Notes: generated by a model from the sequence alone, not told the origin. A stretch of DNA of 64,000 nucleotides from Selaginella moellendorffii (GCF_000143415.4 NW_003314351.1:245490-309489); one strand, 5' to 3'; shown: positions 2,386-41,600, numbered from the stretch's first letter. Program-made: numbers and translations.

Positions 2386-4101
2386 TCAGTGTGAATCATC
2401 TTTTTGACAGGAGAGAACTTTCACCTCGTCTCCAACAATCTCTATCACCTGAAACGATGGCTTTTGTCAGCAAGAAAAGATTGCGAGGAACTGATATCTT
2501 CGTTTCTTACTTGAGGTGTTGCGTTTAGAACACCCCGAGACATTCCCACGTCAATTCGCCACACCTTGCCATCACACTCACTGTAAAAAAAGAAGGAAAA
2601 AACTGATTTTTAGATCTAAAATGCGAGGCAAGGCAAGTATTTTACCTGTTGGCTCCTTCAACCTGTGGAGTGTGTCCAATAACCAGCCCTTTTGCCTTGG
2701 CAGCATCCAAAGTTTGTTGAAGCACTGCACAAGCCTGAACACGAACAGAGAAAAAAATGAGGGATAATGGTGAACGAATTCCATGCTCACCTTGGGTTGT
2801 GGTATCTCTTTGGTTTTCCTGGAATACAATCTGCTCCATACAATGGAGTCGAAACCTTTGGTTGCTATGAATGGTTGCTTCCCATTGTAAGCTCCACCCT
2901 TCATCCAGTTACTCACTTCGCTGTTCATTTTCTCCAGGCCGTAAGCAACTGCATAACACTGCCAGTCATTACTTGAAGATCGACTTTATACGAGCATACC
3001 GTGGTGAGGTAGAAGGCCACCATGAGCAAAGAGCCAGTCGTTGATTTTCAGAACCACGCCATGCCTCGACAACTCCAGTGCTAACGGACCCCCCGGACTG
3101 AAAAGCAAAACTCTCGCATCCATCTTCTTCCTCACCTGCTTTGCAATTCTCCAAAAGTAAGATTCGACGACCTTGAGCATAGCTTTACCTTGAAAACGTT
3201 CCAAAATGGTAACCAGGTTGAGGACTCGAATCTGCTCTTCTTCCACTCTGGCCATTCTAGTCTCCACTGCACAAATGCCGTATGCCAGTGGCCGTCGTGT
3301 CGCTCGTTACAGTAGTCCACAAAATGCTGCGAGTCCTCGAATCCACAATCAGGTGTGTCGTTGAATTCATGGCTCACGTTCATTGTCTCGTGATTTCCAT
3401 GTACCTGCATATCAAAACTACAAAGTTCCGTAATGCAAAGATACAAAATAAAAAGAGCGAAAGAGCTAGCTATCGTAGTATTGCAAAAACAAAACCTGAA
3501 AGACAGCCCCACCCTTGGAACGAGCTTGCTCGGTTAGATGCCACAGGAGTGACAGTATGGCGATTTCATCAGGACCACGGTCGAGGACATCTCCAACTTG
3601 GACAAGAACCTGCGACAATTCTCGTGAATATCAATCAGTAACGAACTCAACTGCACAAACAAACCGGACAATTCAGAGAGAAGATAGCGTGACTTAACAG
3701 TGGTGCCTCCAGTCCAATTATCTTGTTCATCGTCGGATAAAACTCCAGCCACTCTCAATGCTCTCTTGGTCTGACGTAAATCTCCGTGCAAATCTCCAAC
3801 TGCACAGAACGAAAGGGAAGAAAAGAAGTTATCTGGGACAAAACATAGATTTTTTCGGCTTACCAGCGACAATGCGTCTCTCGGGTGCCGAAATCATAGT
3901 CGGAGGTTCCTTGCCATCCGTGTGAATTCCTTGGCGAGCACTAGCAGCGATGAATCTGGTGTTTTTGCTGAGGCCGATTGCTGCTAGCAGCCCCCAGCTT
4001 GATTTAAAGTGGAGCGTCGAAGAAGCTCTGGCATGGTAGCTACAAACACCAAAATCGAGCGCCACGAACCTTGGAGCACAGAGGCTGGCCTGCATTGCCA
4101 T
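2386..4101 (-). CDS. SLP1: Shewanella-like protein phosphatase 1 (PPP family, probable plastid transit peptide), multi-exon
   Basis: RRIVA-VGDLHGD, GDVLDRG, VHGNHETMN, FAHGG, WSRLYS, IGHTPQ and WRIDVGMS motifs across spliced exons; Ser/Ala-rich N-terminus; stop at 2386-2388. Confidence 0.9.
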
Positions 4102-4231
4102 GACGGAGAGAGAGAATGATACCCTAATGCTTGCCTTTAAGAAAAGTGAGAAATCACTGAAAGAAACAATGTGAAACTCGGTGACAGTAAACGATAGAAT
4201 TAGCATAGGAACGAAATTTCTAAGTTCTTAC

Positions 4232-5295
4232 TCAAGTTCCACTCCGCGGTTTGATGCTGCTGGTCCAGAGAAGATCACTGTCCGAGGAAACAGTGACTTT
4301 ATCCGACGCGAACATGTTGGAAGTGCTAACCAGGCCTCCAAATTCCATGGAAGTTTGATCTGGAAAACAAGGTTAGAGAGAGTGAGAAGAATGGTGGAAG
4401 TATTTTACTCAAGTTCCATTTGAGTCCCGTGGTTGTGGCTGTGCAGGGTCTGCCGAGAGGAATGATCCCGCAATTCGGACCTTCGTGCTCGGGCGAGACG
4501 TGGATGGTGTGAAGAACGTCTCTGGGAAGCAGAAAGACCAAACTCTCATCGTTGAAAAGTATGATCCGGAAGCTCCTGAAAGAAAAGAGTACGTTGATGT
4601 TTCCCATCTCGTGATCAAATCTTCCACCCAACGCTCCCACCACCAAAATCTTCATCTGTTACGAAGAACACACACGCGGCAGTAAAGAAGAAGCTAAACA
4701 AAGAAAACAACGAAGAAAAACGGCTAGAACAGTTCTTACATTGATACTTGCTGGATTTGTGGTGGTCTCGGCGACGAAAGAGATGCACTTGTGAAGATCT
4801 ACCGTGTCTTGATCGTGAGATTTGTCTAGAACAGCAGTACCCTGAGAAGAAAAATATGAAACAAACTTTCCAGAGATAAACGAGCGAAACCACATACTCT
4901 TGATTCGTAGAACTGCCTCACTTCCGGGAGAATGGAGTCCAAATCCCCAATGATCGCATCCGGTATGAACCTACACAAGGGAGAATCTCATCTCATCCAT
5001 CTCTCGAATCGATTCATCTCACCTTTCTCTCACGATCGATTCCTCCTGTCCCAGCAGCAACGGAAGCTCGTTGTAGAGCCGATTAGCTCCTCCATCGGCG
5101 CACATTCGCAACCTAGCTGCAAGGAAAAAGGGAAAACAATGCGACGCGCCATCCGCGAAAGATTTGGATCAAACCTCTCTGCCACAGCAATGCCGCCAGC
5201 GATGGCAGGCGATAGTTGAGGATCACAAGCACGTAGGAGCAGTCGGAACTATGGGCGCCGCATCCACTGAGAAGCTCTCCCATGCAATGCTCCAT
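4232..5295 (-). CDS. TPK: Thiamine pyrophosphokinase, multi-exon
   Basis: YVLVILNYRLP, ADGGANRL, FIPDAIIGDLDSI, HDQDTVDLHKC, GALGGRFDHEMGNIN, TTTGLKWNL and FGGLVSTSN motifs. Confidence 0.93.
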
Positions 5296-5296
5296 T

Positions 5297-6361
5297 TTAA
5301 AATAGACGAAGACCTAGACAGGTCATACCGTACATCGGGAAGAACCTTAAAACAGAGGATCGTGTCGTACAGTGGTACGGAACTAGCCCACTCTCGCGGG
5401 CTTGGACTTTCTCCCGAAGTCTCTTGCGAATCGCATCCGATTGCTCGGCTCTTCCCATCCTCTTCGCAGCGATGTCATACTCCTGGAGCCTCCCCACGGC
5501 GGCCAGCGTTCGTTTCTCCAGCTCCATCTCCAACTGGCGAATCTCTCCGCGGGAAATCGCAGCCTCACGGGCAATGGCCAGTCGAGATACCTAGAGAATG
5601 GAGTCACGAGAAGAGCTTTCCGGGTTGCGATGGTACCTGGTCGACGATATCGATCGACGCCGGCACCTACGATGAACCAGAAGAGAAATCCATGGTCGAG
5701 GAGGAGAAATTTCGAGAAAAATCTTAGCAATACCTGATTGCCGGTTGGAGCAGCAGATATAGAGATCTTTCTCGATGAGCGCCATGGAAGATCGGTTGAA
5801 AATCGTGCCGATACCTGATCGCTGGCTGGAGCAGCAGCCACTGTCGACGCTGGAGCACCAGGATTTCGAGCCGTCGGAGGAGAACTCTACAGATTTGGGA
5901 GAGATCGGCCATGGCATTCTCGAAATATGACAAAGATACCTCGTGAATCGGAGTGCCTGGATGCAGAGGCAATGAGGAAGACGACGGATTGCCGGATCGC
6001 ACCCTCTTCTTGCGAAGCTGGGATTTCGATACCTGGTTGCCGGTTGGAGCAGCAAATGCCGCGACGCTAGGAGGAACCTATAGAGATCATTCTCGATGAG
6101 CGTCAGGGAAGATCGCTTGAAAATCGTGCCGGTACCTGATCGCTGGCTGGAGGAGCAGCCACTGTCGACGCTGGAGCACCGGGATTTCGAGCCGTCGGAG
6201 GAGAACTCCAGAGATTTGGGAGAGATCGGCCATGGCATTCTCAAATCCAGCTGAGATACCTCGCCAATGGGAGTGCCAGGAAGTGGCGCCAGTGAGTAAG
6301 ACGACGCATCGCCGGATCGCACCTTCTTCTTGCGGCTCTGCGATTTCGATCCGCCCGCCAT
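5297..6361 (-). other. Unidentified coding-like or degenerate element 'X' (copy 1)
   Basis: ATG at 6361 is divergent from RPT3; overlapping ORFs in several frames with no recognisable domain; homologous copies at about 9300-9492 and about 16500-17175. Confidence 0.35.
5730..6335. repeat. About 300-bp imperfect tandem duplication (2 units) inside element X
   Basis: 5730-6015 and 6030-6335 share long runs such as gcagccactgtcgacgctggagcacc and agatttgggagagatcggccatggcattctc; the peptide RMPWPISPKS.EFSSDGSKS occurs twice. Confidence 0.9.
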
Positions 6362-6432
6362 AGCTAGCTCTCTCTCACAAAAGTATAAGGGCGGCAATCT
6401 ATTCAAACGAGCTTTCTTAGGGTTTATATTTC

Positions 6433-7934
6433 ATGGCCCTCGTCGATATGATGACTAGCTCCGGCGATGGCGAGGTCTATCTCCGGCTCAAGGCCTTGGA
6501 GGACGAAATCAGGTACCACGACATCCGATTAGAGTGCACCGAGACGGAGATGAGATTCACGCGCCGCCAGATCCTTTTCGCGATGGAAGAGGCAGCGAGG
6601 CTTCGATCCATGCCGCTATGCATAGGCCACTTGGTGGAGGTGATCGACGGGGACCACGCGATTGTCTTGTGGGAGCATACGCCGCGGTATGTTAGGATCC
6701 AGAGCACTGTGAACAGAGAGCTTCTCAAGCCGGGGAGCTCGGTTGGTCTAAACAGGCACTCGTTGGCTCTCGTGGATGTTCTTCCATTGGAGGTGGACTC
6801 TTCGGTGTCGATTCTCACGGATTCTCTCAGACCTGAGGTCACGTATGCGGTACGAAGTTCCTTCTTTTGTTTCCTTCTCTTTTGTAGACAAACTTTACAC
6901 CACCTTTGATCTAGTTTTCTTCCATTCAAGCTTATCATTTTTCTTTTCTAGAAACTTTACCAGATTTGGTAAAACTTTTCTTTGGTTTTGCAGGAAATTG
7001 GGGGCTTAGAGTTACAGAAGCAAGAGATTCGAGAAGCTGTGGAGCTTCCGCTGACGCACCCCGAGCTCTACAGGCAGCTCGGAGTTGATCCACCCAAAGG
7101 AGTTTTGTTGTATGGTGCTCCGGGAACTGGAAAAACCATGCTCGTCAAGGCTGTGGCACATCACACCTCCGCTGCTTTCATCCGGGTTGTGGCATCAGAG
7201 TTCGTGCAAAAGTACCTTGGAGAGGTAAGTTCTTTCTGCTCATTTTTCGTAAGCTCTCAACAGGAGAACTTTCGTGTCGAAACGTTGTGCAGGGTCCACG
7301 GATGATGCGCGATGTTTTCAAGCTTGCCAAAGAAAATGCGCCAGCGATCATCTTTATAGATGAAGTAGATGCCATCGCCACTGCTCGCTTTGATTCTCAA
7401 ACTGGCGCAGACAGGGAAGTGCAGAGAATTTTAATGGAGCTTCTTACCCAGGTTTTTCTTTCCTTTCCATTTTCTAAAAACCTTTGCTCAAAGCGTTCTC
7501 CTGCAGTTGGATGGATTCGATCAATGTCTCAACGTGAAGGTTATCATGGCTACAAACCGTGCTGATACTTTGGACCCCGCTCTACTGAGGCCTGGAAGAC
7601 TCGACAGGAAGATCGAGTTCCCCTATCCAGATCGGCGAGAGAAGCGACTCATTTTCCAGGTTTGCACGTCCAAGATGAACCTCAGCGATGAAGTTGATTT
7701 CGAGGACTTCATTTCGAGGCCAGACAAGATCACGGCTGCCGAAGTAAGCGCTCATTAGGACTTTTGACAAGAAAAAACCCACGAACTTGTGCTTTCCAGA
7801 TATCAGCAGTTTGTCAGGAAGCTGGGATGCAAGTAGTGCGTAGGAACCGATACATAGTTCTTGCCAAGGACTTCGAGAAAGGGTATAAAGCCAACGTGAA
7901 GAAATCCAGCAAGGAGATGACCTTTTACCAGTAA
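6433..7934 (+). CDS. RPT3: 26S proteasome AAA-ATPase RPT3 (subunit 6B)-like, divergent N-terminus, copy A, 5 exons
   Basis: GAPGTGKT Walker [13 protein letters not shown] pore loop, IIFIDEVD Walker [31 protein letters not shown]-terminal FYQ (HbYX). Confidence 0.92.
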
Positions 7935-7989
7935 CTGAGGTTGATCAAATTATTTGAAACCACTTTATCTTTACAGAGAAAGCAGCTCT

Positions 7990-8300
7990 CTTGGGCTTCG
8001 AGTTCCTTAACTTGCCTTCGCAGGTCTCCAGAGTTACAGGCGAAGAGGCCTTTACTCACACAGATCTTATGAGACCACGTCCCTCCACACTGAATCTCTC
8101 GGCTTGCAAGTTCTCAGCTTTCCCCAGTGCTAACTTGCTTCACAGGCGAGTCGTAATTCCTCGTAACGCGTGCTTTCTGGAACAGTGCAGAAAGGGAAAG
8201 CTTTAATCAAACTTTCAAAGCATACCCATTTATCCACGATGGTTTTTGTTGCTGCACGAAGTGACAAAAGATTCAACATGACATGCTAAATGATGTCAAA
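7990..8300 (-). pseudogene. Deleted relic of the IWS1 3' region
   Basis: Discontinuous matches to 18900-19690 (ggtctccagagttacaggcgaagaggcctttactcacacag; agcatacccatttatccacga; gctaaatgatgtca). Confidence 0.85.
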
Positions 8301-8309
8301 GTTAATCCT

Positions 8310-8440
8310 TTAAAACGGAGCGCGAAGAAGCTCTGGCATGGTAGCTAACACCAAAATCGAGCGCCACGAAGGCTTGCCTTGACGGAGCGAGAATGATCCC
8401 CTAATGCTTGCTTTGAAATCACTGTGAGAACAAAAGAAAG
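8310..8440 (-). pseudogene. Relic of the SLP1 5' end
   Basis: Matches about 4005-4165 (gaagaagctctggcatggtagcta...caccaaaatcgagcgccacgaa) with internal deletions. Confidence 0.8.
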
Positions 8441-8459
8441 TGATAGTGAAAGTGAAAGT

Positions 8460-9292
8460 AAGCGAGGAAACAGTGATTTTATCGAGAGGAATGGTGGAAG
8501 TACTTTACGAATTTGAGTCTTGCCGAGAGGATTTGGCCCTTCAAGTTCGGGCGAGACGTGGATGGTGTGAAGAACGTCTCTAGGAAGAAAATAGACCATG
8601 ATCCGGAAGCTCCTGAAGGAAAAGAGTACGTTGATGTTTCCCATCTCGTGGTCAAATCTTCCACCCAACGCTCCCACCACCAAGATCTTCATCTGTTACG
8701 AAGAACACACACGCGATAGTAAAGAAGAAGCCAAACAACGAAGAAAAACGGCTAAACAGTTCTTACATTGGATTTCTCGGCGACGAAAGAGATCCACTTG
8801 TGAAGATCTATCGTGTCTTGGTCGTGAGATTTGTCTAGAACAGCAGTGCCCTGAGGAGAAACAAACTTTCCAGAAATCAAACGAACGAAACCAGACTCCT
8901 GATTCGTAGAACTGCCTCACTTCCGGGAGAATGGAGTCCAAATCCCCAATGATCGCATCCGGTATGAACCTACACAAGGGAAAATCTCATTCGATTCATT
9001 TTACCTCTAACAATTTCTTACCTCTCGCACGATCGATTCCTCCTGTTCCAGAAGCAACGCCAGCTCGTTGTAGAGCCGATTAGCTCCTCCATCGGCGCAC
9101 ATTCGCAACCTAGCTGCAAGGAACAAGGGAAAACAATGCGACGCGCCATCCGCGAAAGATTTGGATCAAACCTCTGTGCCACAGCAATGCCGCCAGCGAT
9201 GGCAGGCGATAGTTGAGGATCACAAGCACGTAGGAGCAGTCGGAGCTATGGGCGCCGCATCCACTGAGAAGCTCTCCCATGCAATGCTCCAT
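8460..9292 (-). pseudogene. Second TPK copy with internal deletions and truncated C-terminus
   Basis: Near-identical first exons to 4232-5295, but lacks ILFNDESL, TTTGLKWNL and most of the last exon. Confidence 0.82.
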
Positions 9293-9299
9293 TTCAAAA

Positions 9300-9492
9300 T
9301 AGCCGAAGACCTCGTACATTGGGAAGATGATGCCGTACAATGGTACGGACTACCCGCGGGCTTTCTCTTGCGAATCGCATTCGATTGCTCGGCTCTTCCC
9401 ATCCTCTTCGCAGCGATGTCATACTCCTGGAGCCTCCACGGCGGCCAGCGTTCGTTTCTCCAGCTCCATCTCCAACTGTCCACGGGAAATCG
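9300..9492 (-). repeat. Partial copy of the 3' part of element X
   Basis: Matches about 5300-5555 (gattgctcggctcttcccatcctcttcgcagcgatgtcatactcctggagcc), then switches abruptly to AT-rich DNA. Confidence 0.85.
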
Positions 9493-10329
9493 ACGGATCG
9501 GGGGCTTTACAAGAATGTTAATCTTACTTCCTTGTAATGCTTTAATCAATATTGTTGTGAAATATATTAATCATTAGTTGTCATTTTTTTTTCGTTTTTG
9601 TTGTTCTTGTGTCTCTGCAACAGGAAGTAATGAGCAAATGCTCACACTTCTATGATGGTTGTCTCAATGCAACTGAAAACAAAACTTTCATGTAATGACA
9701 CTCACCATAAGCATACCATAAAGTTAATATTTGTTGTTGGTGACCCAACTAATATTTATCAAAATTTTATGTAAATAATAAACATATTAATATTGATTTT
9801 TAAACATTAATAATGTGTAAAAAATAGTCAGCATAACATAAGCTCACACAAATAGCATAAAATTAATGTCATTCATAAACACATAAAAACATACATAAAA
9901 GAAATGCAAAAATATAAATTAATAGATTCATTTGTCAAATCCATTCAACACACTAAGTTTTAAGAAATATTATATGACTCAACAAAACATTTAAACTCTA
10001 CAAAAGCATTGCCCTTTCTAAGTGCAGCTATGAACAATACATACCTGTTAATATTTCATTTTGTTGTGGATCTCACACCATATGAATCCTTCTTTGTTAC
10101 TCATAAACCCCTAAACCTTAAACTTAAAAAATTTCAACAACTGTTATTTATTTGTAAGTATTAATCACTCACTAAAATAAACAACATATGAACAATTTTC
10201 AATTCACACACTTCTTAATTTAAATGTCCTCACCTTTTATAAAAAAAAGTGTAACAATTCTTATTATTCAACCATGACATTTATCACATGATACCAACTA
10301 GCCAAAATGAACCATTGTTCTATATGCTG

Positions 10330-10669
10330 ATGTAAGCCCAAGACTTGCACATGTAAGCCTGAGGATATGTTACCGCATGGCATTGTGCCGTACAGCAACA
10401 ATAATTAGACAACACCACGGGCTGCCCAATCTGGTTATACCCCTGAAGAATGACATTCTGCAAGTAAAAGTTCGACTGCCTGATCCCTCTGAATATCTGC
10501 TCTGCCTCTTCCAAGCTTCCACAGCGGCATACATGTCAAAATTCGCCACGAACACATCCTCCCTGTAAGGACCCTAATCAATCTGGGCATGAACCCGCTT
10601 TGCTCTTGCCAAATTCCTGTCTCTGCTGCAGCTTCTGATCAACTGAGTAAGCAGCAGCCTCTCTTTCAT
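10330..10669 (-). pseudogene. 5' fragment of a PLS-class PPR gene
   Basis: MKERLLLTQLIRSCSRDRNLARAKRVHAQI...DVFVANFDMY and MEEAEQIFRGI...NVILQGYNQIG lie in different frames (frameshifted). Confidence 0.75.
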
Positions 10670-11527
10670 GCGGTGGAGGTCGCTGAAACAGACACAAGCC
10701 TTTGTAAAATGCGAAGTGACTAAAATATTGCCTTTAACAGAAATTTACACAAATGTGAAATAGGTATTATATAGGCCGGTTAAAATTGCATTTGAATATT
10801 CCATTTCTGTTCAAATGCAGCCGACGTGAGAATTTGACAGTGTCCAGTACATACTAGTTTACAAGATCAGTCAGTTAATATTTCGCTTCTTGTCAATTCC
10901 GTTGCGAAGAGTGAAAACATCTTATTCGGAAAGGATCCCATAGCCCCAAAGGACGGCCAAGAAAGTAGATACCGAGCATGGTGAAGCATGGAAGTGGCGG
11001 ATTTGGACCATGCGTCGGGTCCCCACCCCAGACGCAAGTACCCTGATTTCACATCTCCAGATCTTCCTTTGAAGAAATGAGCCTGACGATTCCAACGGGT
11101 CACTTTAGTCATCTCGTGCGTGGAATCAATCTTTCTGTCTGCGAGAGCTGCTCTTCTTGACCTTTCTTCTCGGCCTCTCTTCCACCTCGCGGAACAAAGA
11201 TTCATCGACAGTCTGGTAGCACGGGCTCTTTCCAAAAATCTCCTCAAACGTGTAGCCCTCGGATAGGACTTTGCGATGCAGCTAGTATGTAGCTCGCCCT
11301 TGATTTGTCTGCGCCTGGAAGTTCTTTTCGCCACAGCAAATGGTCAAAAAGTTTGGATCGGTTGGGTGTGGCTTTTGGCAGAGAGTGTCAAATGAGTTTC
11401 TCATGGATGGTAGCTGAACATGTAGATGGTTATGAATCTTTTGTTCAACGTGTGGCTGTCCACACATGATGAATGCCAGAGATGCACAAGGTACAAAATA
11501 TGAACAGGAAGTTCTTTGTCAAAAGGC

Positions 11528-12207
11528 TGCAGCATCGGACCCGGAAAAGCATCCACCTTTGAGACTTTGAATGAAATGGACAACTTTTTCATGCACCACA
11601 ATTCGAACGAAACACTAAGAAAGCTCAGGATTCATGTGAAGACTTGCTGGCTAGTGTCCTTTACTGCACAAACATCACTGCAAGAAATTGACACACTTAA
11701 TCAAATTCCTGACCTTAAAATCTGACCAATTATAAAAGTGTCAGGTGATCAAAAAGTTTAATATGAGAATAATGTGTGTCTGGGATGGCTTATATGCCAG
11801 TCTGAAGTGCCCGAACATCTATCCCAAGCTGTCAACTCATTGTTGACAGCTTGGGGTCCCATTCACTGGGACGATTTCATCGACATATTCATACCAGGCT
11901 TCTCTGGCATGTGTGATGGTTTATATTCTGTGACCAGGAAGTGTGAGAGGGCCGTTCAAAGTGAAGACTTGCTTGCTGGCTAGTGTCAGAAGGCTGCAGA
12001 ATCGGTCCCGCATCGGATCCCATCCCATCCAATCGATCCCATCCAAAGTCTTAAAGGTGGATGGGATCGATTGACACTAGCCAGCAAGTCTTCACAATCT
12101 TGGGCTTTCTTAGTGTTTCGTTCGAATTGTGGTGCATGAAAAAGAATGGTATTGTCCATTTCATTCAAAGTCTCAAAGGTGGATGCCTTTCCGGGTCCGA
12201 TGCTGCA
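11528..12207. repeat. About 130-bp inverted repeat (11528-11658 / 12073-12207) with nested shorter hairpins
   Basis: tgcagcatcggacccggaaaagcatccacctttgagactttgaatgaaatggacaa...gtgaagacttgctggctagtgtc is the reverse complement of 12073-12207, with few differences. Confidence 0.9.
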
Positions 12208-12467
12208 CTAAGAAAGCATCAATTCCTCTCCTAACTCTGGTGGAATTGAACCCTCCAGCATGTTGGCCTGGAGAACAAGCACCAGCAGTGATCCCATCCA
12301 TCATCCAAAGTCTTAAAGGTGGATGGGATCAATTAACACTCAAGGTGGACATTGGCAGACATTGGACCCCAGCGCAACTGTCGTGTATGGAGAAGACTAT
12401 AAGAATGGTATTGTCATTCTTATAGCCTTCTCCATGTACCACAATTGCGCTCAAGAGCCTGAGCCAT

Positions 12468-17175: not shown

Positions 17176-17177
<2 letters not shown>

Positions 17178-17214
<37 letters not shown>
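17178..17214. repeat. (CT)n microsatellite, about 18 units
   Basis: Perfect ctctct run; the paralogous site near 6368 has only about 5 units. Confidence 0.97.
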
Positions 17215-17217
<3 letters not shown>

Positions 17218-17276
17218 CAAAAGAAGTACAAGGGCGGCAATCTATTCAAACGAGCTTTCTTTAGGGTTTTGATTCA

Positions 17277-22740: not shown

Positions 22741-22825
22741 ATCGCTGCCAAAAATCCGATTTTTTCATCGCCAATGTAAAGTTTGTTTATCTTCTGATGC
22801 GATCGATCCTTTGGTCCAATGTATT

Positions 22826-31887: not shown

Positions 31888-31929
31888 CGCGCCTCGGCAT
31901 CTTTGTCGATAAACCCTAACCCCTAGGGC

Positions 31930-32410
31930 TCGGAAATCTGGACCGTTGGATTCTCATTAGTTGGAATTCCGGAATGGAACTGGAGCTTGTAGGTCTGACA
32001 GATCGAAGGGTATAGGTTTTAGCAGCGATGGAGTGGACGGCGAGGAGGTCCAGGGAGCCGAGAGCCGGCCACAGTGTGGAGTATTTCATCACTGGTTGGT
32101 AGTTTCATTAAGTCCTCTTTGTTTTCTTTTTCTTCTAGGCGTTGAAAGTTTGGATGTTGCTAAGGTTCTGGCTCAATGTAGTATACCCTGTCCCGAAGAT
32201 CACTGATTATCCGAAGGTGAATATGGCAACAATATTGTTTATGGTACGCTATATAATGGATTGCTTACGTGAAGCCAAATTTCCTTATAGAGCAACAGTA
32301 GGAAAGAGGAAGCGAGAAGAAATGCATCAGCTCTGTCGAGAGAAGCTAGGAAGCAGCCATTCTCTGTGCTACGAAGTGGGGCTCTCCATGTTGGATTTAG
32401 CATTTGTAGA
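31930..32410 (+). pseudogene. Deleted relic of the TWD40-2 promoter and 5' exons
   Basis: Matches 38400-38730 and 39915-40245 (gcgatggagtggacggcgagg; ggcgttgaaagtttggatgttgctaaggttctggctcaatgtag) with many deletions. Confidence 0.9.
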
Positions 32411-32419
32411 CATCCAGTA

Positions 32420-33870
32420 AAGCTCTTGACCTCCTCCCGGTCAGTCGTGAGAGAAGCGGATTTGCTCGACTTGCATCCACTCCTAGCTTATCTTCTGGGG
32501 TGACTTGTTTCCCTCTTGGACACCCGTTTAGGCTATCTCATTGCCTTCCAGCGTAGGCGATGGCTTCTACTTCTCTGTCTGGATCAGAAGCTAGAACCAT
32601 CCCCTGTGCTCCCTTGAGTGCTGTTTTGATCTGGTTGTGGCGAGTACTTCCAACACCTCTCACATTTCTGGCCCTCAACCCTCCATCTTGCAGCTCCCGT
32701 GTATGCATAATATGCGTCTTCGCAATTGACAACTTCCACCTGAGCGAGAGAAGAAAATTGTTTTTTTCTCTCCCTGTGCGTATAGAACATCTAACGCGGA
32801 AGATCTTAATTGTCAAGAATATAACGTGTAGCTTGCCATCATCCTGCCATTCCTTGGAGTGTGGAGTGCAGTACGTCTCCCAGTGAGGCAAACCTTTGTG
32901 TCGAGCTTTGTCCTATCAGATTTGCCATCGTTGCTGACTGCAAGACTTTGTTAACTTCCACCCGGAGCTGTGCATGCAAACGAGTGTCACGACGTACAAG
33001 TGTCGATTCGCAAGGAGAGTTTCTCACCTCTAGAAGAAGTGACCACAGCTTCGTGAAAACGCACAGAAATCGTCCGCCATCACGGGTCTAGTTTGGGCCA
33101 CCACGCCTCAAACACGCTCTCGGCTTTGGAGCCCGTCTGGTAGAGCTGCGTCCTTTGCCAGGTGTGGAACAACAGGCGATACCCCACAGGCCAGATACAG
33201 CAACTAGAACCGTTTGGCAGTTTCTTCTTTTAGAGCTATCATAGTCCCCCCTGCAGGAAAACTGATCAGAAACGAGGGAAGATCCGAACGAAACAAGCTT
33301 GATCACCCAAGGTATAATCTGTCCTTCGAAAAGTCCAGATAGAAGTTGGTCAGATCAAACACCGCATACCGTTGCACCGACTGCATTCACGTGGAGACAC
33401 ACAGAGTTAATAGGAAAGCTTGTATAGCAACCTGGAAGAATTTTCGAAACTGGTACTCGTCTAGGCTGTCCTTGAGGCTATCCATTACGCTTGCGAGCTG
33501 GAAGAGAGCGTACTTATCTATTCCAGGGAGGTCACTCGACCTGTGCTAACTTCAGCTTGGTCTCGTATGCTCGCCACGTAGTTCTCTTCCAGGTACTTCT
33601 CTATTGTTTTGGCCTTGGCAGGAGACTCCACCACGGCCACCCACCTTTCCCGTGAGAGCAGCCCGTTTTCTTGTTCTATTGTCTCTTTGGAGGAATCGAT
33701 GGCAGTTGCAGCTCTTACTTCTTGTTCTATCGTAATTGATGGCAGTTGCAGGTATTACTTCAGCCCTTTTCTTGCGTCTCGAGGATTTTGCTCAGCCTCG
33801 GATGTCTGCTGGCTTTTGGCTTTGACAGCCACTCCTTTCCTTCCAAACCAGTGCTTGATCAGCCGCTAGC
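32420..33870 (-). pseudogene. TOP1A relic B, split by an inserted IleRS fragment
   Basis: 33560-33870 matches the TOP1A N-terminal/VESPAKAKTI region; 32420-32637 resumes NQIKTALKGAQGMVLASDPDREVEAI. Confidence 0.85.
32640..33545 (-). pseudogene. Intron-containing C-terminal fragment of an organellar-type isoleucyl-tRNA synthetase
   Basis: DLPGIDKYALFQL...EYQFRKFFQ; FDLTNFYLDFSKDRLY; RRNCQTVL; PVVPHLA; LRVEVNKVLQSA; Zn finger GQKCERCWKY. Confidence 0.82.
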
Positions 33871-34559
33871 ATCTCAAACCAAAGCTGGATCTCAAGTGCA
33901 TATCTGGAGGGCAGTCACACGGAACAAGAAAGAAGCAAAATATACTCGTTGATCGTTTGTGATCCGTTGAAGGATAAGTCTCTTGGAGTAAAGCTTGAGG
34001 ATAGTCGATCTCAGTCTTGAAGGCCCTCCAAGTAGTGTCGCAATGTCATGGGAATGGAGTGGAGTTCATCAAAGGAACCCTGGACAAGCACCAAACATTT
34101 TCAAAACCAATATGACATTTAGAAGAACTTACTTGGCCAATTTCTTCTTGGTGGAAATCTCCAGCAGCCTTTAGAAACTGTGTCGCATGGAAGATTAGCA
34201 GCTTTGCATTATTGGAAACGTATGTTCATCGTCTTGCTTGAGCGTGCCTGTGAAGAATCAAAGGAGAAAAACACTCCAACATATAGAGAAAAGAAAAATT
34301 GCACAAGCACACACCTTCCACAATCCTGCTTGCCCAAAGGCAGAGCAAGCTGTGGAGCTCTTCCACGAGTCCCCTGTCCCTCACTAGTTTCCCTGCTTCG
34401 AAGTTCTCAGCACTGATGCAACCTTCAATATGAGAACGTCCATCACTTGTCATGTTTTGTAATCACCTGGTTCATTTGTGATATTTTCCCACCCTTGTCT
34501 CTCAGCTACACGAACACTGGGTTGATCCAGTTCTCGCATTTTGGAGCTACAGTTTCCTT

Positions 34560-34890
34560 GGGGCTTTCCATCTTCTTTCGTTCCTTCTTCTTCGCGGCAT
34601 TGGTAGTGTCATCGCATTGCCTACTGTTTGGATCTAGCATTTTTCTTATATTTCTCTGGTATAGGTCTCCCTCTAGAGATCCATCACATTCTCAGCCTCA
34701 TTTTCTACTCTTAATTTCTGCCATCACCCCTGGCCCAAAAATCCCACACGATACCCTACTTGTGGCAATGGAATAGAAATGCTGCTGAGGACCAGCTTGA
34801 GAGCTCTCATTGTACTCATTACTAGTCGACAATTTGGTGGAGCATGTCGAGGCCAAGCAGTATCTTCGTTGATAAACCCTAATCCCTCGT
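34560..34890 (-). pseudogene. TOP1A relic C (5' end and telo-box)
   Basis: Diverged match to 31370-31925 (cttcttcgcggcattggtag; aaaatcccacacga; gataaaccctaa). Confidence 0.7.
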
Positions 34891-37058
34891 AAATATATTC
34901 GTATATATGCTTCAAATATGCATGCCCATACGAGTGAAATCAACAAAACAGTGAAGCCAAATGTAAATGCCCAGAATGACACATTTTCCTGCCACCAGCT
35001 GCTGCTGCTGAAATGCTCATAAACCACTAAGGTGAAATTGCTATTGTAGGGACACTCTTTGTCAAGTGGCTTTCCACACAGGCCTGGATTTTCCAAATAG
35101 CTTGACTTATCAAATGTGCTCATCTGCCCCAAGCCAAATGGAATCTTGCCCTCAAGCCTGTTGAATGAAAGATTCAGAACTGATAGTGAATGAATTTTTT
35201 GAAACGTGTTGGGGATGGGTCCAATAATGTTGTTGAAGGAGAAGTCATCTTGCCTAGAGTTTGGGGAATGTTTCCAGAAAAGTGATTATTGGAGAGATTG
35301 AGGATGCGGAATCTAACCAACTCACCCAAACTTGGAGGAATCACTCCCGTCAACTGGTTGGAAATTGTCGTTCTCTTCCTTTGACCATAAGCATTAATGT
35401 TTTCCTAAACAATCCTATAGGTCTCCATTCAGGAATATCATTGGTATGTTTGAATGCATATAATTGGCTTAGAGAACCTGAAAGACTTCCTTCAAACTTG
35501 TTGTGGGAGAGGTCAAGGATGTGAAGGTGGGTCATGTTCCACAACCAATCAGGTATTGGGCCATGGAATCTGTTTCCACCAATGATTAGCACTGTGAGAT
35601 TTTTGAAATGTGAAAGAAATGAAGGAATTTTGCCAGAAAACTTGTTATCACTGATGATAATGTGCTGTACTTTTTGTGATAGACTTTCTGGTAGCTCACC
35701 TTCAAATTTGTTATATGAGAGTGAAACATATTGAAGATTTGTCATGCTTTTGAAGACATCTGCTCCAAGCTTTCCACTCAGAGAGTTATTATCAACCCGA
35801 AGAAAAATTAGATTAGTGCAGTGCTTGAGCCAATTTGGCAAACCCCCAACTAATCTATTACCACTCACATCCAGGTAATTCAAATTACACAAAGGCCCAA
35901 TACTTATTCCCAATATTTCCCCAGTGAGCATGTTGTTTGACAAAAATAGGAATTGCATGTCCCTTGAAATGGGTGGCATATGTCCATTGAATTTGTTGTC
36001 TGATAGATCCAAGTATTCAATTGAAGTCGTTGTCAAGATATATGATAAGCTGCCATTTAAGCTGTTGTTACTCAACTCAAGAAATTTCAGATTCAATAGC
36101 TGCCTTAAATTTATTGGTATGGCACCAGTCAACAAATTGTTACCCAAGTGTAGCTCATTTAAATTTGATAGATGTCCCAAGCTAGCTGGTATACTACCTG
36201 TGAACCTGTTATTCCTAAGGTTAAGGTTGATTAGTCCTCCCATTTGTCCTAAGCTGAGTGGTATCGTACCACTGAACATGTTGTAACTGAGATTTAAACG
36301 CTGGAAATTACTTGAATATGATGGAATATCACTTGATAGAAATGAGCTTGTCAAGGAGCAATGTTTTAGAGTAAGATCCTCCAAATGAGTCAAGTTCCAT
36401 ATTTCTTTTGGGATTGCCCCAGTACCATTCAAATGACTCAAAGACAAAACTTTGAGAAGAGGTAGAAGCGTGAGTGACACTTTCAATAATGTTATCAGGG
36501 AAAATGTGTATCTCCTCCAGCTTACTGCAATTACCAAGCTCCTCAGGGATTGACCCAAAAATATAGCCAAAGGAAATTTCAACATGACGTAGGTTTTTTA
36601 GCTGCCCAATTGACCTGGGTATTTCTCCAATAGCAATGTCAGCCCAAATAACTTCAAGCGATGATAAATTGCCAATAAATTCCGGAATTTCACATGGCAA
36701 ATACAACGTTTTCAGTTTCTTCATCATTCCAAACTCTTTTGGTAGAGGGCCAACCAGGTTATTCAAAGAGAGGTGAAGCACCTCCAGATTTTTCAACCTG
36801 GATACTTCCGGACTGATTATTCCTTCGAGATTGAGACCCCCCAAATCGAGCATGACCAGTAACATTACTGCAGGTCACTCCTTCCCAAGACACACAGAGA
36901 CTGTGAGAATTTTCCATGGTCCAGCTGGATAGAGCAGTGTGATTTGATAAACCTCCTTTAAACGCAAGCAAAGCCTGGGGCTCATACATTTCCCATGCCT
37001 GTATACAAGCTGAGATGCAGAGCATCACATAAGCACCAAGAACAAAAGCCCCTCCCAT
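34890..37058 (-). pseudogene. Frameshifted LRR receptor-like protein
   Basis: Signal peptide and N-cap (QALLAFK...CVSWEGVTC), LRRs, ENPGLCGKPL, WWQENVSFWAF transmembrane region; split over at least 4 frames. Confidence 0.88.
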
Positions 37059-37439: not shown

Positions 37440-38400
37440 GCTACTTTTGTCGTGGAAGTTTGGCCAGAACTGCTTCCACTTCATGTTCCCGGACGAAACA
37501 GCGTCGAGTTGCTGCTCCTCCATCCTGGCCGTGAAGCGGTAGTCCACATCCTCTGTGAAGTAGCGCGACAAGAATGCCGCCACCATCCGGCCTCGAACGC
37601 GTGCTGGAGAGTACGTCTACGGCCTTAGCGTCGCCAGCAGTGAGCGACAACTGGTCCAGTTTGACGCCGTTGTAGCTCACAAGCTGTGCCGGAAAGCTCA
37701 CTTGTCCCTTGCTTTCTGTTGGAGAAATCTCTGCACAGTACTCTCGAGGAGCTCTCGATCTCCTTCTCCAAGGCAGCAGACTGGACTCTTCCAGCGGATT
37801 TGCTAAGCCCCTTCTTCATGATGCCTTCCAGCTTAATCATCTCGAGAATGTGCCAGGCGATGGTTGCTACTACTTCAGCCTTCTTGAGGACTTACTTCGA
37901 ATCTCCACCATCCTTTCCTCCCTTGGGAGGCTTCTTCGCGGCATTTGTAGTGTCGCTGGGCTTTTGTTCCACAGCCACCGGTTGCTGCTTGGATCTGGCA
38001 TTTTCCTTATCTTTCCCTGGCGGATCCTGGTTCTCTTCTTGCGGCTTTGCTGTCCGTTTAGATTTTCCCGCAGGAGGCTTCTTCGTCACATTGTCAGCCT
38101 TTCAGCAGTCGAGGCTTTCAAAGCCACTCCTTTCTTCCGAAACCATGACTGTTAGCAGAAGAGCATGCAATCCAATCCCCCTGGCTGGAATCTACTGCTA
38201 GCGGAAGAGCACGGATTTGTAGCCTGAAGGCTAGCAGAAGAGCACGGGTTTTAGGCCCGACCGATCCAATTCCCCTGGCTCGAAAATCCCATCTGGGGCA
38301 ATGGAAGGCAGGAATGCCGCATACCAGCCGTGAGAACAGAGAACTCTTGGCGCTAGGAGGCAGAATTAGCCCCCGCGCGTCGATAAACCCTAAGCCCTAA
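37440..38400 (-). pseudogene. TOP1A relic D, heavily deleted
   Basis: Collinear pieces of 29370-31925 (MVAAFLSRYFTE, SAGRVQSAAL, VSYNGVKLDQ) joined across large deletions. Confidence 0.9.
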
Positions 38401-38415
38401 GGCTCGGAAATCTGC

Positions 38416-38424
38416 ACCGTTGGA
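38416..38424 (-). promoter_or_regulatory. MSA-like element (TCCAACGGT) beside a telo-box in the TOP1A/TWD40-2 promoter
   Basis: accgttgga here and in the duplicate at 31942-31950; fits the YCYAACGGY consensus. Confidence 0.4.
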
Positions 38425-38602
38425 TTTTAATCACTTGGAATTCCGGAATGGAATGTGGTGCGAGCTCTACACTGGCAGTAGTATAGCTTGTAGGAGCTTC
38501 GCGCGAGGTGAGCTAGGGTTTTGTGGATGTGGATCCGGGAGCGACGCGATGGCGCTAGAGGTGTGACGCAGATCTAAGGGGGTTTATAGGGTTTTAGCAG
38601 CG

Positions 38603-41600
38603 ATGGAGTGGACGGCGAGGCAGTATCTGGAGGTCCAGGGAGCCCAGAGCGATGGAGCTCGGCCACAGTGCGGAGCATTTCATCACTCGCAGGCGCTCTT
38701 CGCGGCTGCGGTCGGGCAACACATCACTGGTGAGATTTCCGAGCTAAATTCTCCGAATTGACGCGAGGATTTCGCGTGATCCGGAAATTTTACTAAGAAT
38801 GTGAGAGGGTTGGCTGATGATGGTGAATTTTCTTGCAGAGTTTGATGCTCTCACGGGCTGTAAGCTCTCGAGCATCAATATTGGAGCTTCCGTCGTGCGT
38901 ATGGCATATAGTCCTGCTGGCGGGCATGTAATTGTCGCTGTTCTAGAGGTATGATACAGCTCTTGGCATAGATCTTTTGCATGAATTGGATTCTTTTTTT
39001 TTCCTCCCAGGATTGGAGCATTAAGTCGTGGGATCTAGATACCGAGCATACGCATTTTCTTTATTCTCCAGCCAAGAAAACAGACAGGATCTCAGAAGGG
39101 ATGGAGATACACATTGCTCTGACACCACTTCGACCGTGGCTGTTCTTTGGAACGTATCGGCGTTCAAGTGTAAATGGTAAGTCTTTTCTTGTATCAAGAT
39201 AAACTATTTGATGCGTCACGTTTGGTTGTAGTTGTGGGGACTATAGAAGGTGCCAAACCAGCGACCATTATTAAGACGGATCTGAAAAAGCCAGTCACTG
39301 GCCTTGCTTGCCATCCAAGAAGTCCTCTTCTGGTACCTACATCTTTTCGTTAGATTTTTTCGCATTTTTGGTAATTCGGATCTGTTTGGACAGTTCGTTG
39401 CGTATGCCGAAGGGCTTATTCGGGCATATCACATACAGTCTTTCACCGTGCAGTATACCTTGCAAAGTATGTTCCTTCTATGTCTTTCACTCAACTATTT
39501 GTAACCGAACCATTTTTGCAGTTGATACGTCAATAAAACTAGTTGGAGCAGGAGCGTTTGCGTTTCATCCGACTTTAGAATGGGTTTTTGTTGGCGACAG
39601 AAGCGGCACACTAATAGCATGGGACGTCTCAGTTCCAACACAACCCAGTATGATCGGGATGTAAGTACCAGTCTACGTGTTTGCTTCAGGATGCTAAATG
39701 TTCATTGAACTTGGCAGCACTCAAGCGGGTTCAAATCCAATTTCAGCTCTTTCCTGGCATTCTATGTTGCGGTTACTTGTGACTCTTTCAAGGGATGGCA
39801 TGGTGCAGGTGTGGAGGACGAGGGTCATTCTAAATTCGAATAAGCCTCCCATGCGTGCGAACTTCTTCGAGTCTGCAGGTACATAATACTGGTTATTCAA
39901 TATACGGGTAGTTTTATTAAGTCTTCTTTGTTTTCTTTTTCTTCTAGGCGTTGAAAGTTTGGATGTTGCTAAGGTTCTGGCTCAATGTAGTGGCGACACT
40001 ATATACCCTGTCCCGAAGATTACTGATTTTCTCCTACATCCGAAGCTGAATTTGGCAACAATATTGTTTCCGGTACGCTATATAATAGACTGTTACGTGA
40101 AGCTAAATCTTGTCCTTATAGAGCAACAGTAGGAAAGAGGAAGCGAGAAGAAGAGCATCAGCTGTGTCGAGAGAAGCTAGGAAGCAGCTATTCTCTGTGC
40201 TACAAAGTGCTAGGGGCTCTCCAGGTTGGATTTAGCATTTGTAGAAATGATCTTGAGCTGATATTTTAAGATTTAGGATCGGTCTTGAAGGAAAAACTTG
40301 CACTTTTGGGCTCGACTGGCATTCTACCCGATTATCAGCTGCAGATGCAATTACAGCAGGCGAGAGGCCAGCAAGGGTAAGCATCATACCATTCATCAAA
40401 TACAGTAATGACGTCTCTTTAACAGCCTGACAATGTCGGACCTTGCGCGAAAGGCATTTTTGTATGGAGTAAGCACACACTATGTTTGATGCCATAATAT
40501 TGACACTTCACGTTATTTTGGCAGAAACATGGAGGGGAGCCAAGAGACACTACTTCATTTAGACTACCGCTTTTATCCATTGCAGATCCGAGTCATCACT
40601 TGCGTGATCTCCCTGTTTGCCAGGTACTAAACTTCAAGCATTAAGTATTTGAAACTAATTTCTGTTTTCTTCAGCCATTGCAACAAGACCTTGGGTTCTT
40701 TACCTCTGAACAAGGCATATTCAATTATCCTGTCCGTGCTTTTTTCATGGACGGTTGTAACCTTTCTGCTTACAATCTTGCATCTGGAGACTATAATATC
40801 TACAAAAAGCTTTCTCCGACCGTAAGCACTGAGTTCAATTGGCTGTAAAATTGCGTTGACATACCTTGCACAGGCACTTGGAGGTCAAGAACGGTCGCCT
40901 ACTCACATGCTATATAGTTCTCGACAGCATCTTTTTCTTATATTCTTTGAGTGCCGAGGAGCCATTGGCGAAATCGTTATCTATCGGGAATCCTTAACTG
41001 CTGAAGCTGTTGGTGAACGTTTGAACACTATAACAGGTTCAGTCCGTTTTCGATCTCGAACTCTCTGTTTCTTACATTTCAGTTGCAGGCCGCGATGGTG
41101 CTTTTCTGGGATTTAAGGAGGACAAGTATGCAATTCTTGATGAAGACGGGGTTGGATTGACTCTTTATCCTCTTGAAGACGAAGTTAAATCAGCCACATC
41201 CAATGGCGATACAAATGGTGCTTTAGACGCCAGTACATTTTCAGAACTTCATGCAAAGGCTCAAACGTACGAGAACGGACAGAAAGGCTTGATACAGTTT
41301 GTGTTTGATAGTCCCGTGCAACGCATATATTCTACTCCCTTAGGTTCGATCTCTTATACTGCCTCTTTTGTACTCACACATGGGTTTTCAGATTCTCTGT
41401 TAATGTATGTCTCCTCTGGGAGTCATATAGGACTGACACGAATATTTTCAAGTGGTTATGGAGCCAGCGGCGACATGTTTGAGCTTTCTACGAAACAAGA
41501 AGACGGTCGCTTCTTGAAAATCAGGCAATTTGAAACGGTTTTGCAGGTACTCGTAATGTGTATCAATCTGTTATATTTTTCTATTTAATTTTTTCCTTCA

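What the first reader, a model, noticed from the sequence alone, without database searches (positions are those of the whole stretch)
4005..40245. Recurrent architecture: an LRR-RLP cargo sandwiched between reciprocally decayed duplicates of housekeeping blocks, seen twice in 36 kb
Seen: Block 1 is [SLP1 5', TPK, X, RPT3a, IWS1 relic] then [SLP1 relic, TPK pseudogene, X relic, about 7 kb cargo with a PPR fragment and an intact RLP, X, RPT3b, intact IWS1]. Block 2 is [intact TOP1A, TWD40 relic] then [TOP1A relics with an IleRS fragment and an RLP pseudogene] then [TOP1A relic, intact TWD40-2]. Both RLPs share a WWxENVS juxtamembrane motif, and no transposase is visible. Inference: either these receptor genes spread by a route that duplicates kilobases of flanking DNA, or redundant duplicates act as safe landing pads in a genome with almost no intergenic space. 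Either would be a distinctive mode of immune-receptor turnover.
Basis: partly seen in the sequence, partly recalled or inferred. Interest (0 to 1): 0.8.

Follow-up and report, generated by a model that had tools for sequence, protein, structure and literature searches.

The report
Receptor genes lodged in old duplicates
In a gene-dense stretch of the spikemoss Selaginella moellendorffii, two receptor-like genes sit inside old local tandem duplications, but the plant's second chromosome copy carries one duplication without its receptor, so at that block the duplication came first and the receptor-bearing DNA was patched into spare DNA later, which is a known kind of event.

Summary
Self-alignment shows two local direct duplications: 4003-8112 versus 8309-9505 plus 16497-18996, and 29408-32413 versus 37447-40248. 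Each is interrupted by DNA carrying an LRR receptor-like protein (RLP) gene. RLP1 is intact at 939 aa and probably transcribed. RLP2 is broken in both haplotypes.

The window is S. moellendorffii GL377655.1. The other haplotype (GL377638.1) has the Block 1 duplication but lacks the 7.0-kb RLP1 cargo, so the kilobase duplication was not made by the RLP's arrival.

The truncated edge genes follow from a tandem duplication whose breakpoints lie inside the flanking genes. They are not reciprocal decay, and RPT3a looks intact.

The cargo has no transposon ends. It is bracketed by a 244-bp repeat of the target, and the left copy of that repeat was copied from paralog A. The cargo also holds scraps of other genes. 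Together these point to double-strand-break repair with ectopic templates.

RLP1 and RLP2 share only 37-41% identity. WWxENVS is a family-wide Selaginella motif. About 59% of the non-genic DNA here is duplicate relic, so two inserts landing in relics is close to the null expectation.

Verdict: a well-documented local example of known processes, of moderate-to-low interest. Earlier scan notes on this genome record similar gene-fragment patchworks that involve no RLPs.

The parts
4003..8112 (.). Block 1, tandem unit A. It contains the SLP1 5' exon part, intact TPK (4232-5295, minus), the unknown gene X (about 5383-6406, minus), RPT3a (6433-7934, plus) and a short IWS1 3' relic (7935-8112).
   Evidence: Self-blastn; gene calls and Pfam; RPT3a ORFs and indel pattern.
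8113..8308 (.). Junction filler between units A and B, with no match elsewhere in the window. The other haplotype lacks 8047-8415.
8309..9310 (-). Unit B, left part: the SLP1 exon-1 relic (8309-8417) and a TPK pseudogene. The pseudogene keeps only TPK_catalytic pieces, and it shares deletions with the other haplotype's copy.
9311..9505 (-). Second copy of the target (the 3' end of X plus spacer), abutting the cargo. Its sequence is of the copy-A type, not the copy-B type.
   Evidence: Alignment and coordinates. Site patterns at 9319-9488: B=A 16, B=alt 4.
9506..16496 (.). The 6,991-bp cargo, absent from the other haplotype. It contains a PPR-like scrap (10404-10651, minus), two exon-sized pieces of other expressed genes (11141-11266 and 11353-11462), a foldback (11528-12207), an inverted 61-bp piece of RLP1 (12228-12288) and RLP1 itself.
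12468..15287 (+). RLP1: an intact, intronless 939-aa LRR receptor-like protein. It has a signal peptide, LRRNT_2, LRRs, an island, WWEENVS, a transmembrane segment and a short tail.
   Evidence: Contigs of three probable RNA runs from three studies cover the ORF only.
16497..18996 (.). Unit B, right part: the first copy of the target (16497-16707), X' (minus), RPT3b (17277-18791, plus) and the start of intact IWS1 (18940-20941, minus).
28750..31887 (-). Intact TOP1A (1045 aa: Toprim, Topoisom_bac, zinc ribbon, C-terminal repeats).
29408..32413 (.). Block 2, unit 1: TOP1A codons 1-827, the shared promoter and a TWD40 5' relic (31981-32413). The relic has an internal 1.2-kb deletion.
32444..34796 (-). 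Middle partial TOP1A copy. It holds pieces of codons 41-69, 148-176, 228-288, 283-342 and 366-398, interleaved with foreign DNA that includes an IleRS-like scrap at 33390-33545.
34884..37058 (-). RLP2 pseudogene, in at least five frame pieces. It has a signal peptide and LRRNT, LRRs, WWQENVS and a transmembrane segment. It is also fragmented in the other haplotype.
37447..40248 (.). Block 2, last unit: a heavily deleted TOP1A relic (37431-38356, minus), the promoter, and the 5' part of intact TWD40-2 (from 38603, plus).

Best explanation
Two separate, old local tandem duplications occurred in a gene-dense region. One copied about 4.1 kb (SLP1 5' end to IWS1 3' end). The other copied about 3 kb or more (the TOP1A 5' 2.5 kb, the shared promoter and the TWD40 5' end).

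In each case the breakpoints lay inside the two outer genes. One full copy of each outer gene therefore survives at the outside of the array, and truncated pieces lie at the inner junction. Redundant inner genes then began to erode by deletion: TPK', the TOP1A relics and the TWD40 relic.

Later, DNA breaks inside this dispensable DNA were repaired by error-prone, template-switching repair that pasted in foreign DNA. In Block 1, a break in the spacer between X' and TPK' was repaired in three steps:
1. The TPK'-side end copied from paralog A. It overshot the break by 244 bp, which produced the flanking 'target duplication'.
2. That end then joined a 7.0-kb mosaic carrying RLP1 and scraps of other genes.
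3. The mosaic's far end joined the other broken end at 16497.

The result is a presence/absence polymorphism of an intact, probably transcribed RLP. Block 2 is an older, degraded case of the same kind, with RLP2 dead in both haplotypes.

What is shown: the duplications, the empty allele, the copy-A origin of the left flank, the absence of terminal repeats at the cargo ends, and the gene scraps. What is inferred: the repair pathway, and that selection tolerates insertions only in spare DNA.
For: - Duplications and their edges.
- Window identified as S. moellendorffii GL377655.1, and its allelic scaffold as GL377638.1.
- The allele aligns at 96.7% from window 25753 down to 16497, then continues at about 9478-8415. 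It therefore holds RPT3b, X', TPK', the IWS1 relic and RPT3a but no cargo.
- Breakpoints and the 244-bp repeated target.
- Left flank next to the cargo is copy-A-like (9319-9488: 16 sites against 4). Further out it is allelic (8425-8592: 24 sites against 1, with shared deletions).
- A/B divergence is JC 0.14-0.15, against 0.011-0.025 between alleles.
- No terminal inverted repeats or LTRs at the cargo ends. Pfam gave no transposase hit for the cargo and Block 2 ORFs I tested (not every ORF).
- Exon-sized pieces of other expressed genes lie in the cargo, and their RNA contigs run on into sequence that is not in the window.
- An independent DNA run has a contig bridging the left junction (9449-9577) and carries RLP1 at about 99.3% identity.
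- Block 2 is present in both haplotypes, each with its own deletions.
- Gene movement by break repair, with filler DNA and without transposon signatures, is established in grasses (PMC3615480, which cites Wicker et al. 2010; PMC2686159).
Against: - The donor of the cargo was not found. No protein at 50% identity or more to RLP1 exists in either library, so copy-and-paste from a surviving donor is unproven.
- The empty allele could in principle be a secondary loss.
- Only about 4 kb of the allele's Block 1 was retrievable. Its unit A beyond RPT3a was not seen, and its RPT3a is truncated.
- For Block 2 the order of events cannot be resolved. M plus RLP2 sit exactly at the unit junction, which also fits a single complex event.
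- Two cases in 36 kb, plus a third RLP lying between P450 copies elsewhere, leave room for a real association that I could not test genome-wide.
Confidence: 0.62

Rival explanations
1. One reading: RLP genes move by a route that itself duplicates the flanking DNA, so duplication and RLP arrive together.
For: - Each RLP insert is bracketed by direct repeats of local sequence: 244 bp in Block 1, and TOP1A codons about 41-176 on both sides of RLP2 in Block 2.
- M plus RLP2 lie exactly at the unit junction at 32413/37447.
- A third family member lies between two P450 copies that are 93.9% identical.
Against: - The kilobase-scale Block 1 duplication exists without the RLP on the other haplotype.
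- That duplication is far older than the allelic split.
- The repeated 244 bp on the left comes from paralog A, not from the target itself.
- RLP1, RLP2 and the other motif-bearing RLPs are only 35-41% identical.
- The P450 case reads as an ordinary 17-kb tandem unit that includes the RLP.
Confidence: 0.07
2. Block 2, and possibly the wider region, arose in one complex replication-based event (template switching of the FoSTeS/MMBIR or chromoanasynthesis type). That single event would have laid down unit 1, a partial TOP1A copy, a foreign RLP-bearing stretch and unit 2 in one pass.
For: - The foreign DNA sits precisely at the duplication junction.
- A-M and A-B divergences are similar, at JC 0.13-0.14.
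- Gene scraps such as the IleRS-like piece are interleaved.
- Block 1 has a similar age, at JC 0.14-0.15.
Against: - The Block 1 cargo clearly arrived later than its duplication.
- The divergence estimates rest on short, decayed segments and range from 0.06 to 0.14.
- No junction microhomology could be established, because the donors are unknown.
Confidence: 0.2
3. The RLP1 cargo is old, and the 'empty' allele is a secondary deletion produced by recombination between the two 244-bp repeats.
For: - Direct repeats flank the cargo.
- RLP1 has no close paralog that could be a recent donor.
- Cargo alleles in other runs differ from the window by about 0.4-0.7% and by several indels, so the insertion is not brand new.
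- Deletions are frequent in both haplotypes.
Against: - The allele's single repeat is B-right type throughout, and the sequence just beyond it differs from the copy-A-like left flank of the window. A simple repeat-to-repeat crossover would not produce this.
- Paralog A also has the uninterrupted X-TPK arrangement, so 'empty' is the ancestral state of unit B in any case.
Confidence: 0.15
4. Assembly artefact: haplotype mixing or mis-joins in the two-haplotype Sanger assembly created the apparent duplications or the insertion.
For: The assembly holds both haplotypes. Some allelic stretches here are unusually diverged.
Against: - Both scaffolds carry both duplications, each with its own private indels.
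- A contig from a 2024 DNA run bridges the left cargo junction, and a 3.8-kb contig spans the region upstream of RLP1 into RLP1.
- The copies are 7-15% diverged, not collapsed or near-identical.
Confidence: 0.03

Closest known systems
Gene movement by double-strand-break repair ('patching gaps' with copied foreign DNA; Wicker, Buchmann and Keller 2010 as cited in PMC3615480; the Oryza analysis in PMC3615480)
   Same: - Several kilobases of gene-bearing DNA sit at a non-syntenic site with no transposon ends.
- An empty orthologous or allelic site exists.
- There are short or no homologies at the joints.
- A minority of the rice cases show long homology between acceptor and template.
   Different: - The donor is unknown here.
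- One flank was demonstrably copied from a neighbouring paralog, which created a 244-bp flanking repeat.
- The host is a lycophyte with a very compact genome.
- The cargo is an intact cell-surface receptor gene.
Complex filler DNA at non-homologous end-joining junctions in plants (maize p1/p2 region, PMC2686159)
   Same: Both show mosaic insertions copied from several templates, often nearby, at the junctions of rearranged tandem gene copies. Gene conversion between tandem copies occurs in both.
   Different: The maize filler is tens of base pairs long. Here the inserted mosaic is kilobases long and contains a whole gene.
Presence/absence and copy-number variation of plant immune-receptor genes through unequal crossing over and break repair (for example wheat 2D NLR indels, PMC6097286)
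   Same: A receptor gene is present on one haplotype and absent on the other, and the breakpoints carry repair signatures.
   Different: This is an LRR-RLP singleton rather than an NLR cluster. The scale is kilobases rather than hundreds of kilobases. The insertion lies inside duplicated housekeeping genes, not inside a receptor cluster.
Gene-capturing transposons (Pack-MULEs, Helitrons)
   Same: The cargo is a mosaic of gene fragments from several loci.
   Different: I found no terminal inverted repeats. By inspection, the cargo lacks 5'-TC and 3'-CTRR Helitron ends. The flanking repeat is 244 bp rather than a short fixed-length target-site duplication. Pfam gave no transposase hit for the ORFs I tested.

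Membership tests
Plant LRR receptor-like protein (Cf-9/EIX2/RLP type) | Signal peptide plus LRRNT_2 cap, followed by a long extracellular LRR array. | tested here: met
   Pfam finds LRRNT_2 at 27-70 and LRR_8/LRR_1/LRR_14 across RLP1. RLP2 has an N-terminal hydrophobic leader and an LRRNT-like piece at 36759-37058.
Plant LRR receptor-like protein (Cf-9/EIX2/RLP type) | An island domain followed by about four LRRs, then an acidic juxtamembrane stretch, a single transmembrane helix, a short tail and no kinase. | tested here: met
   The RLP1 C-terminus reads island, four LRRs, a cysteine pair, an acidic S/E/D stretch, WWEENVS, a hydrophobic segment and a 7-residue tail. There is no kinase domain. 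A search with the C-terminal 170 aa returns angiosperm RLP7/EIX/9DC-type proteins at 40-58% local identity.
Simple tandem segmental duplication | Two collinear direct copies that abut, with the junction joining the end of the unit to its start. The outer genes are complete, and their truncated parts lie only at the junction. | tested here: met
   In Block 1, 8112 (IWS1 3' end) is joined through 197 bp to 8309 (SLP1 exon 1). In Block 2, 32413 (TWD40 5' part) is followed, after the inserted DNA, by 37447 (TOP1A codon about 827)..
Break-repair insertion with ectopic templates (SDSA/BIR-like with end joining) | An empty allelic or paralogous site, and no transposon termini. | tested here: met
   The empty allele is on GL377638.1. 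No terminal inverted repeats or LTRs were found.
Break-repair insertion with ectopic templates (SDSA/BIR-like with end joining) | A tract at the junction copied from a homologous template other than the broken copy. | tested here: met
   At 9319-9488 the sequence is copy-A type at 16 of 22 informative sites. At 8425-8592 it is allelic at 24 of 26.
Break-repair insertion with ectopic templates (SDSA/BIR-like with end joining) | An identifiable donor locus, with microhomology at the donor/acceptor joints. | not testable with these tools
   No tool searches the Selaginella genome. The protein libraries hold no close relative of RLP1.
DNA transposon or Helitron carrying captured genes | Terminal inverted repeats with a short target-site duplication, or 5'-TC/3'-CTRR ends with a subterminal hairpin. 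| tested here: not met
   The cargo ends read TTACAAGAATG... and ...CAGTGCGTAGCT. There are no terminal inverted repeats, and the flanking repeat is 244 bp.

The most novel reading that the evidence does not exclude
Local paralogous duplicates may not be merely tolerant landing sites. They may actively promote the capture of foreign, gene-bearing DNA. A break in one copy invades the neighbouring paralog, copies it imperfectly, and then switches template. In a compact genome, duplicated housekeeping blocks would then become preferred entry points for new receptor genes. The copy-A-derived tract that ends exactly at the RLP1 cargo would be the footprint of this process.
Probability: 0.15. Interest if true: 0.6.

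Novelty: new member of a known kind. Interest (0 to 1): 0.35.

Why it matters
The locus gives a cleanly resolved example from a lycophyte of how an intact cell-surface receptor gene becomes a presence/absence polymorphism. Both the filled and the empty alleles are in one assembly, and the repair footprint identifies the neighbouring paralog as a template.

It also shows that an apparently special 'sandwich' architecture can arise from two ordinary processes, tandem duplication and break-repair insertion, combined with survivorship in a genome that has little spare DNA.

If the association with duplicates proved to be genome-wide, it would bear on how immune-receptor repertoires turn over in compact genomes. 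As it stands, the locus is a useful case study rather than a new mechanism.

Tried and rejected
- **Finding RLP1 paralogs or a donor.** I tried the whole protein, the C-terminal 170 residues, and an exhaustive representative search. All three were swamped by long LRR proteins. None returned a relative at 50% identity or more. RLP1's exact sequence is not in the cluster collection.
- **Pfam on cargo and Block 2 ORFs**. No transposase, PPR or tRNA-synthetase domains reached significance. The PPR and IleRS scraps rest on weak similarity only.
- **Terminal repeats at the cargo ends**. None were found.
- **Loose-end sequences of the RNA contigs.** I searched the window for them to test whether the exon-like pieces belong to a local gene. 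They are absent.
- **Extending the other haplotype beyond L004.** This was not possible, because the neighbouring genes (TPK, SLP1, RPT3, IWS1) are spliced and the look-up needs exact products.
- **A genome-wide enrichment test.** The tools do not allow it. Two further RLP loci were sampled. They show an ordinary tandem array that includes the RLP, which neither supports nor refutes an association.
- **Earlier-findings searches by words**. These gave leads only.

Full report
**Identity of the window.** Exact-product look-ups of the two long intronless ORFs place the window on Selaginella moellendorffii assembly GCA_000143415.2, scaffold GL377655.1, with window position 1 at about 245,490. They show:
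- a Metallophos phosphatase;
- a thiamine pyrophosphokinase with both domains;
- an AAA/RPT3-type ATPase, present twice;
- a Med26-domain IWS1-like gene;
- an alpha/beta hydrolase and a PPR gene;
- a bacterial-type topoisomerase I of 1045 aa;
- a 1594-aa WD40 protein;
- two LRR genes.

**The observation.** A self-blastn dot plot confirms both blocks.

In Block 1, unit A (4003-8112) matches unit B, which is split into 8309-9505 and 16497-18996. The roughly 7.0 kb between the halves holds an uninterrupted 939-aa LRR-RLP ORF (12468-15287).

In Block 2, 29408-32413 matches 37447-40248. Between these lie a third, partial TOP1A copy (pieces of codons 41-398, at 32444-34796) and a fragmented RLP (34884-37058, minus strand).

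Both RLPs carry WW(E/Q)ENVS before the membrane segment. The IleRS scrap (33390-33545) and the PPR scrap (10404-10651) are only weakly supported. I found no terminal repeats, and Pfam gave no transposase hit for the ORFs I tested, which were not all of them.

**Why the edge genes look 'reciprocally decayed'.** In both blocks the unit's ends lie inside the outer genes. For Block 1 these are SLP1 exon 1 and the last about 57 coding bp of IWS1. For Block 2 they are TOP1A codon about 827 and the TWD40 5' region. A plain tandem duplication of such a unit must leave one complete outer gene on each side and the truncated parts at the internal junction, and that is what is seen.

True decay is confined to the inner, redundant genes. 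TPK' has lost the B1-binding domain. The TOP1A and TWD40 relics are riddled with deletions.

RPT3a is not decayed in this haplotype. It keeps long ORFs with OB, AAA and lid domains. Its indels against RPT3b are few, and they are either multiples of three or short.

**The other haplotype.** Cluster look-up of TOP1A and the PPR protein found alleles on GL377638.1, and I fetched 10-kb flanks around both.

For Block 1, the allele aligns to the window at 96.7% from 25753 down to 16497. It then continues directly into the TPK' copy (window about 9478-8415), the IWS1 relic and RPT3a. The allele therefore has the tandem duplication but not the cargo.

Base-level alignment puts the cargo at 9506-16496 (6,991 bp). 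A 244-bp piece of the target (allele L004 18006-18249: the 3' end of gene X plus spacer) is present once in the allele and once in paralog A. In the window it is present twice, at 16497-16707 and at 9311-9505.

Block 2, including the broken RLP2, is present on both haplotypes. Each haplotype carries private deletions: the window lacks about 1.2 kb of the TWD40 relic, and the allele lacks window 32207-33512.

**Relative ages.** With gaps excluded, units A and B of Block 1 differ by JC 0.14-0.15 in RPT3 and the IWS1 relic. Block 2 copies differ by 0.06-0.14. Alleles differ by 0.011-0.025. Both duplications therefore long predate the haplotype split.

X and TPK show lower A/B divergence (0.074-0.078) and mosaic site patterns, which indicates gene conversion between the units.

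**The junction footprint.** I compared B-left, paralog A and the allele site by site. Next to the cargo (9319-9488), B-left agrees with A at 16 sites and with the allele at 4. Further out (8425-8592), it agrees with the allele at 24 sites and with A at 1, and it shares several large deletions with the allele.

The left 'target duplication' is therefore not a copy of the broken target. It is a tract copied from the neighbouring paralog that ends at the cargo, and the first about 20 bp at the joint are scrambled.

The simplest reading is a break in the X'-TPK' spacer of unit B. The TPK'-side end invaded unit A and copied past the break position by 244 bp. It was then joined to foreign DNA, and the far end of that DNA was joined to the other broken end. 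This pathway is inferred. The copy-A origin of the tract is observed.

**What the cargo is.** Upstream of RLP1 lies a patchwork:
- a PPR-like scrap;
- two exon-sized pieces (11141-11266 and 11353-11462) that match contigs of other, more highly covered transcripts, whose neighbouring sequence is not in the window;
- a foldback at 11528-12207;
- an inverted 61-bp piece of RLP1's own LRR region.

A 2024 DNA run carries the same insertion. One of its contigs bridges 9449-9577. It holds RLP1 at about 99.3% identity, but it lacks 11097-11479 and differs by several indels upstream. The insertion is therefore real, is not private to the reference, and its non-coding part is still being remodelled.

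Contigs from three probable RNA runs in three studies cover the RLP1 ORF and not the surrounding cargo. This argues for transcription, although the runs' RNA status is the tool's guess.

**Is there an RLP-specific process?**
- RLP1 and RLP2 are 37-41% identical.
- The WWxENVS motif also occurs in three other S. moellendorffii RLPs that are about 35% identical to RLP1, and in none of the 239 other proteins fetched up to that point, none of which carried a S. moellendorffii motif-bearing RLP label. It is therefore a family trait, not a mark of recent common origin.
- No relative of RLP1 at 50% identity or more was found. This means there is no evidence of a spreading clade. It also means the donor is unknown.
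- One sampled family member (P0045) lies between two P450 genes that are 93.9% identical and 17.2 kb apart. Comparison with a second scaffold shows the same unit order, so the RLP there is simply part of an ordinary tandem unit.
- Using the gene-call coordinates, about 6.1 of about 10.3 kb of non-genic DNA between 4 and 40 kb is duplicate relic. Two tolerated insertions would both fall in relics about one time in three. This figure is my arithmetic.
- Earlier scan notes on this genome describe RLP-free gene-fragment patchworks and a scrambled mosaic just upstream of this window. These are unchecked leads, but they point the same way.

**Comparison with known systems.** Insertion of kilobases of gene-bearing DNA at breaks, without transposon signatures and sometimes with homology-driven copying, is documented as a main route of gene movement in grasses (PMC3615480, which cites Wicker et al. 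2010). Mosaic filler DNA and conversion among tandem copies are documented in maize (PMC2686159). Presence/absence of immune receptors through break repair and unequal crossing over is documented in wheat (PMC6097286). The present locus is a new, well-resolved member of this kind, in a lycophyte.

**Limits.**
- The neighbouring spliced genes could not be used for exact-product look-ups without joining exons.
- No tool searches the Selaginella genome, so the donor search and the genome-wide enrichment test remain undone.
- Only Logan contigs, not raw reads, were available for the runs, so zygosity could not be measured.

Noticed in passing
window 24713-27781: An AT-rich stretch (GC about 0.32) lies between the PPR gene and the next gene. 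Within it, 26680-27220 is inverted between the two haplotypes (L003 15286-15825 matches it in the opposite relative orientation).
   Followed up: no
window 13074-13344: All four runs laid on the window (one DNA, three probable RNA, from four studies) share the same five base differences from the window's RLP1. The allele they carry is therefore not the reference one. This region overlaps the piece (13056-13116) that is copied in inverted form at 12228-12288.
   Followed up: partly
window 14166-15214: In run X12, three joints with CT..AC ends (skips of 113, 58 and 57 bp) lie in the 3' half of RLP1. They would be GT..AG introns of an antisense transcript. The supporting sides are under 30 letters, and LRR repeats could cause the same pattern.
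   Followed up: no
window 5758-6350: A 273-bp tandem duplication (5758-6030 versus 6079-6350, 87.5% identity) lies inside gene X of unit A. A single stretch of unit B (16864-17147) matches both copies.
   Followed up: no
L004 19285-21878 (GL377638.1): On the other haplotype RPT3a is called as only 261 aa, and the 1 kb beyond it (20901-21878) matches nothing in the window. Unit A is therefore rearranged or interrupted there.
   Followed up: partly
L005 1-19224 and L006 (GL377576.1, GL377708.1): An RLP with TWWKENVS, preceded by a PPR-DYW gene or gene fragment, lies between two P450 genes that are 93.9% identical with a period of about 17.2 kb. It looks like an ordinary tandem array that includes the RLP.
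   Followed up: partly
window 11141-11266: A 126-bp piece is identical to an exon of a highly covered transcript from elsewhere in the genome. Its reading frame gives a weak (E 0.2) match to CHCHD1/mS37. A 2024 DNA run lacks the 381 bp (11097-11479) that contain it.
   Followed up: partly
window 49900-52200 and 58400-60600: Two further long PPR ORFs (733 and 666 aa) lie here, about 25-29% identical to the PPR gene at 22826-24712.
   Followed up: no
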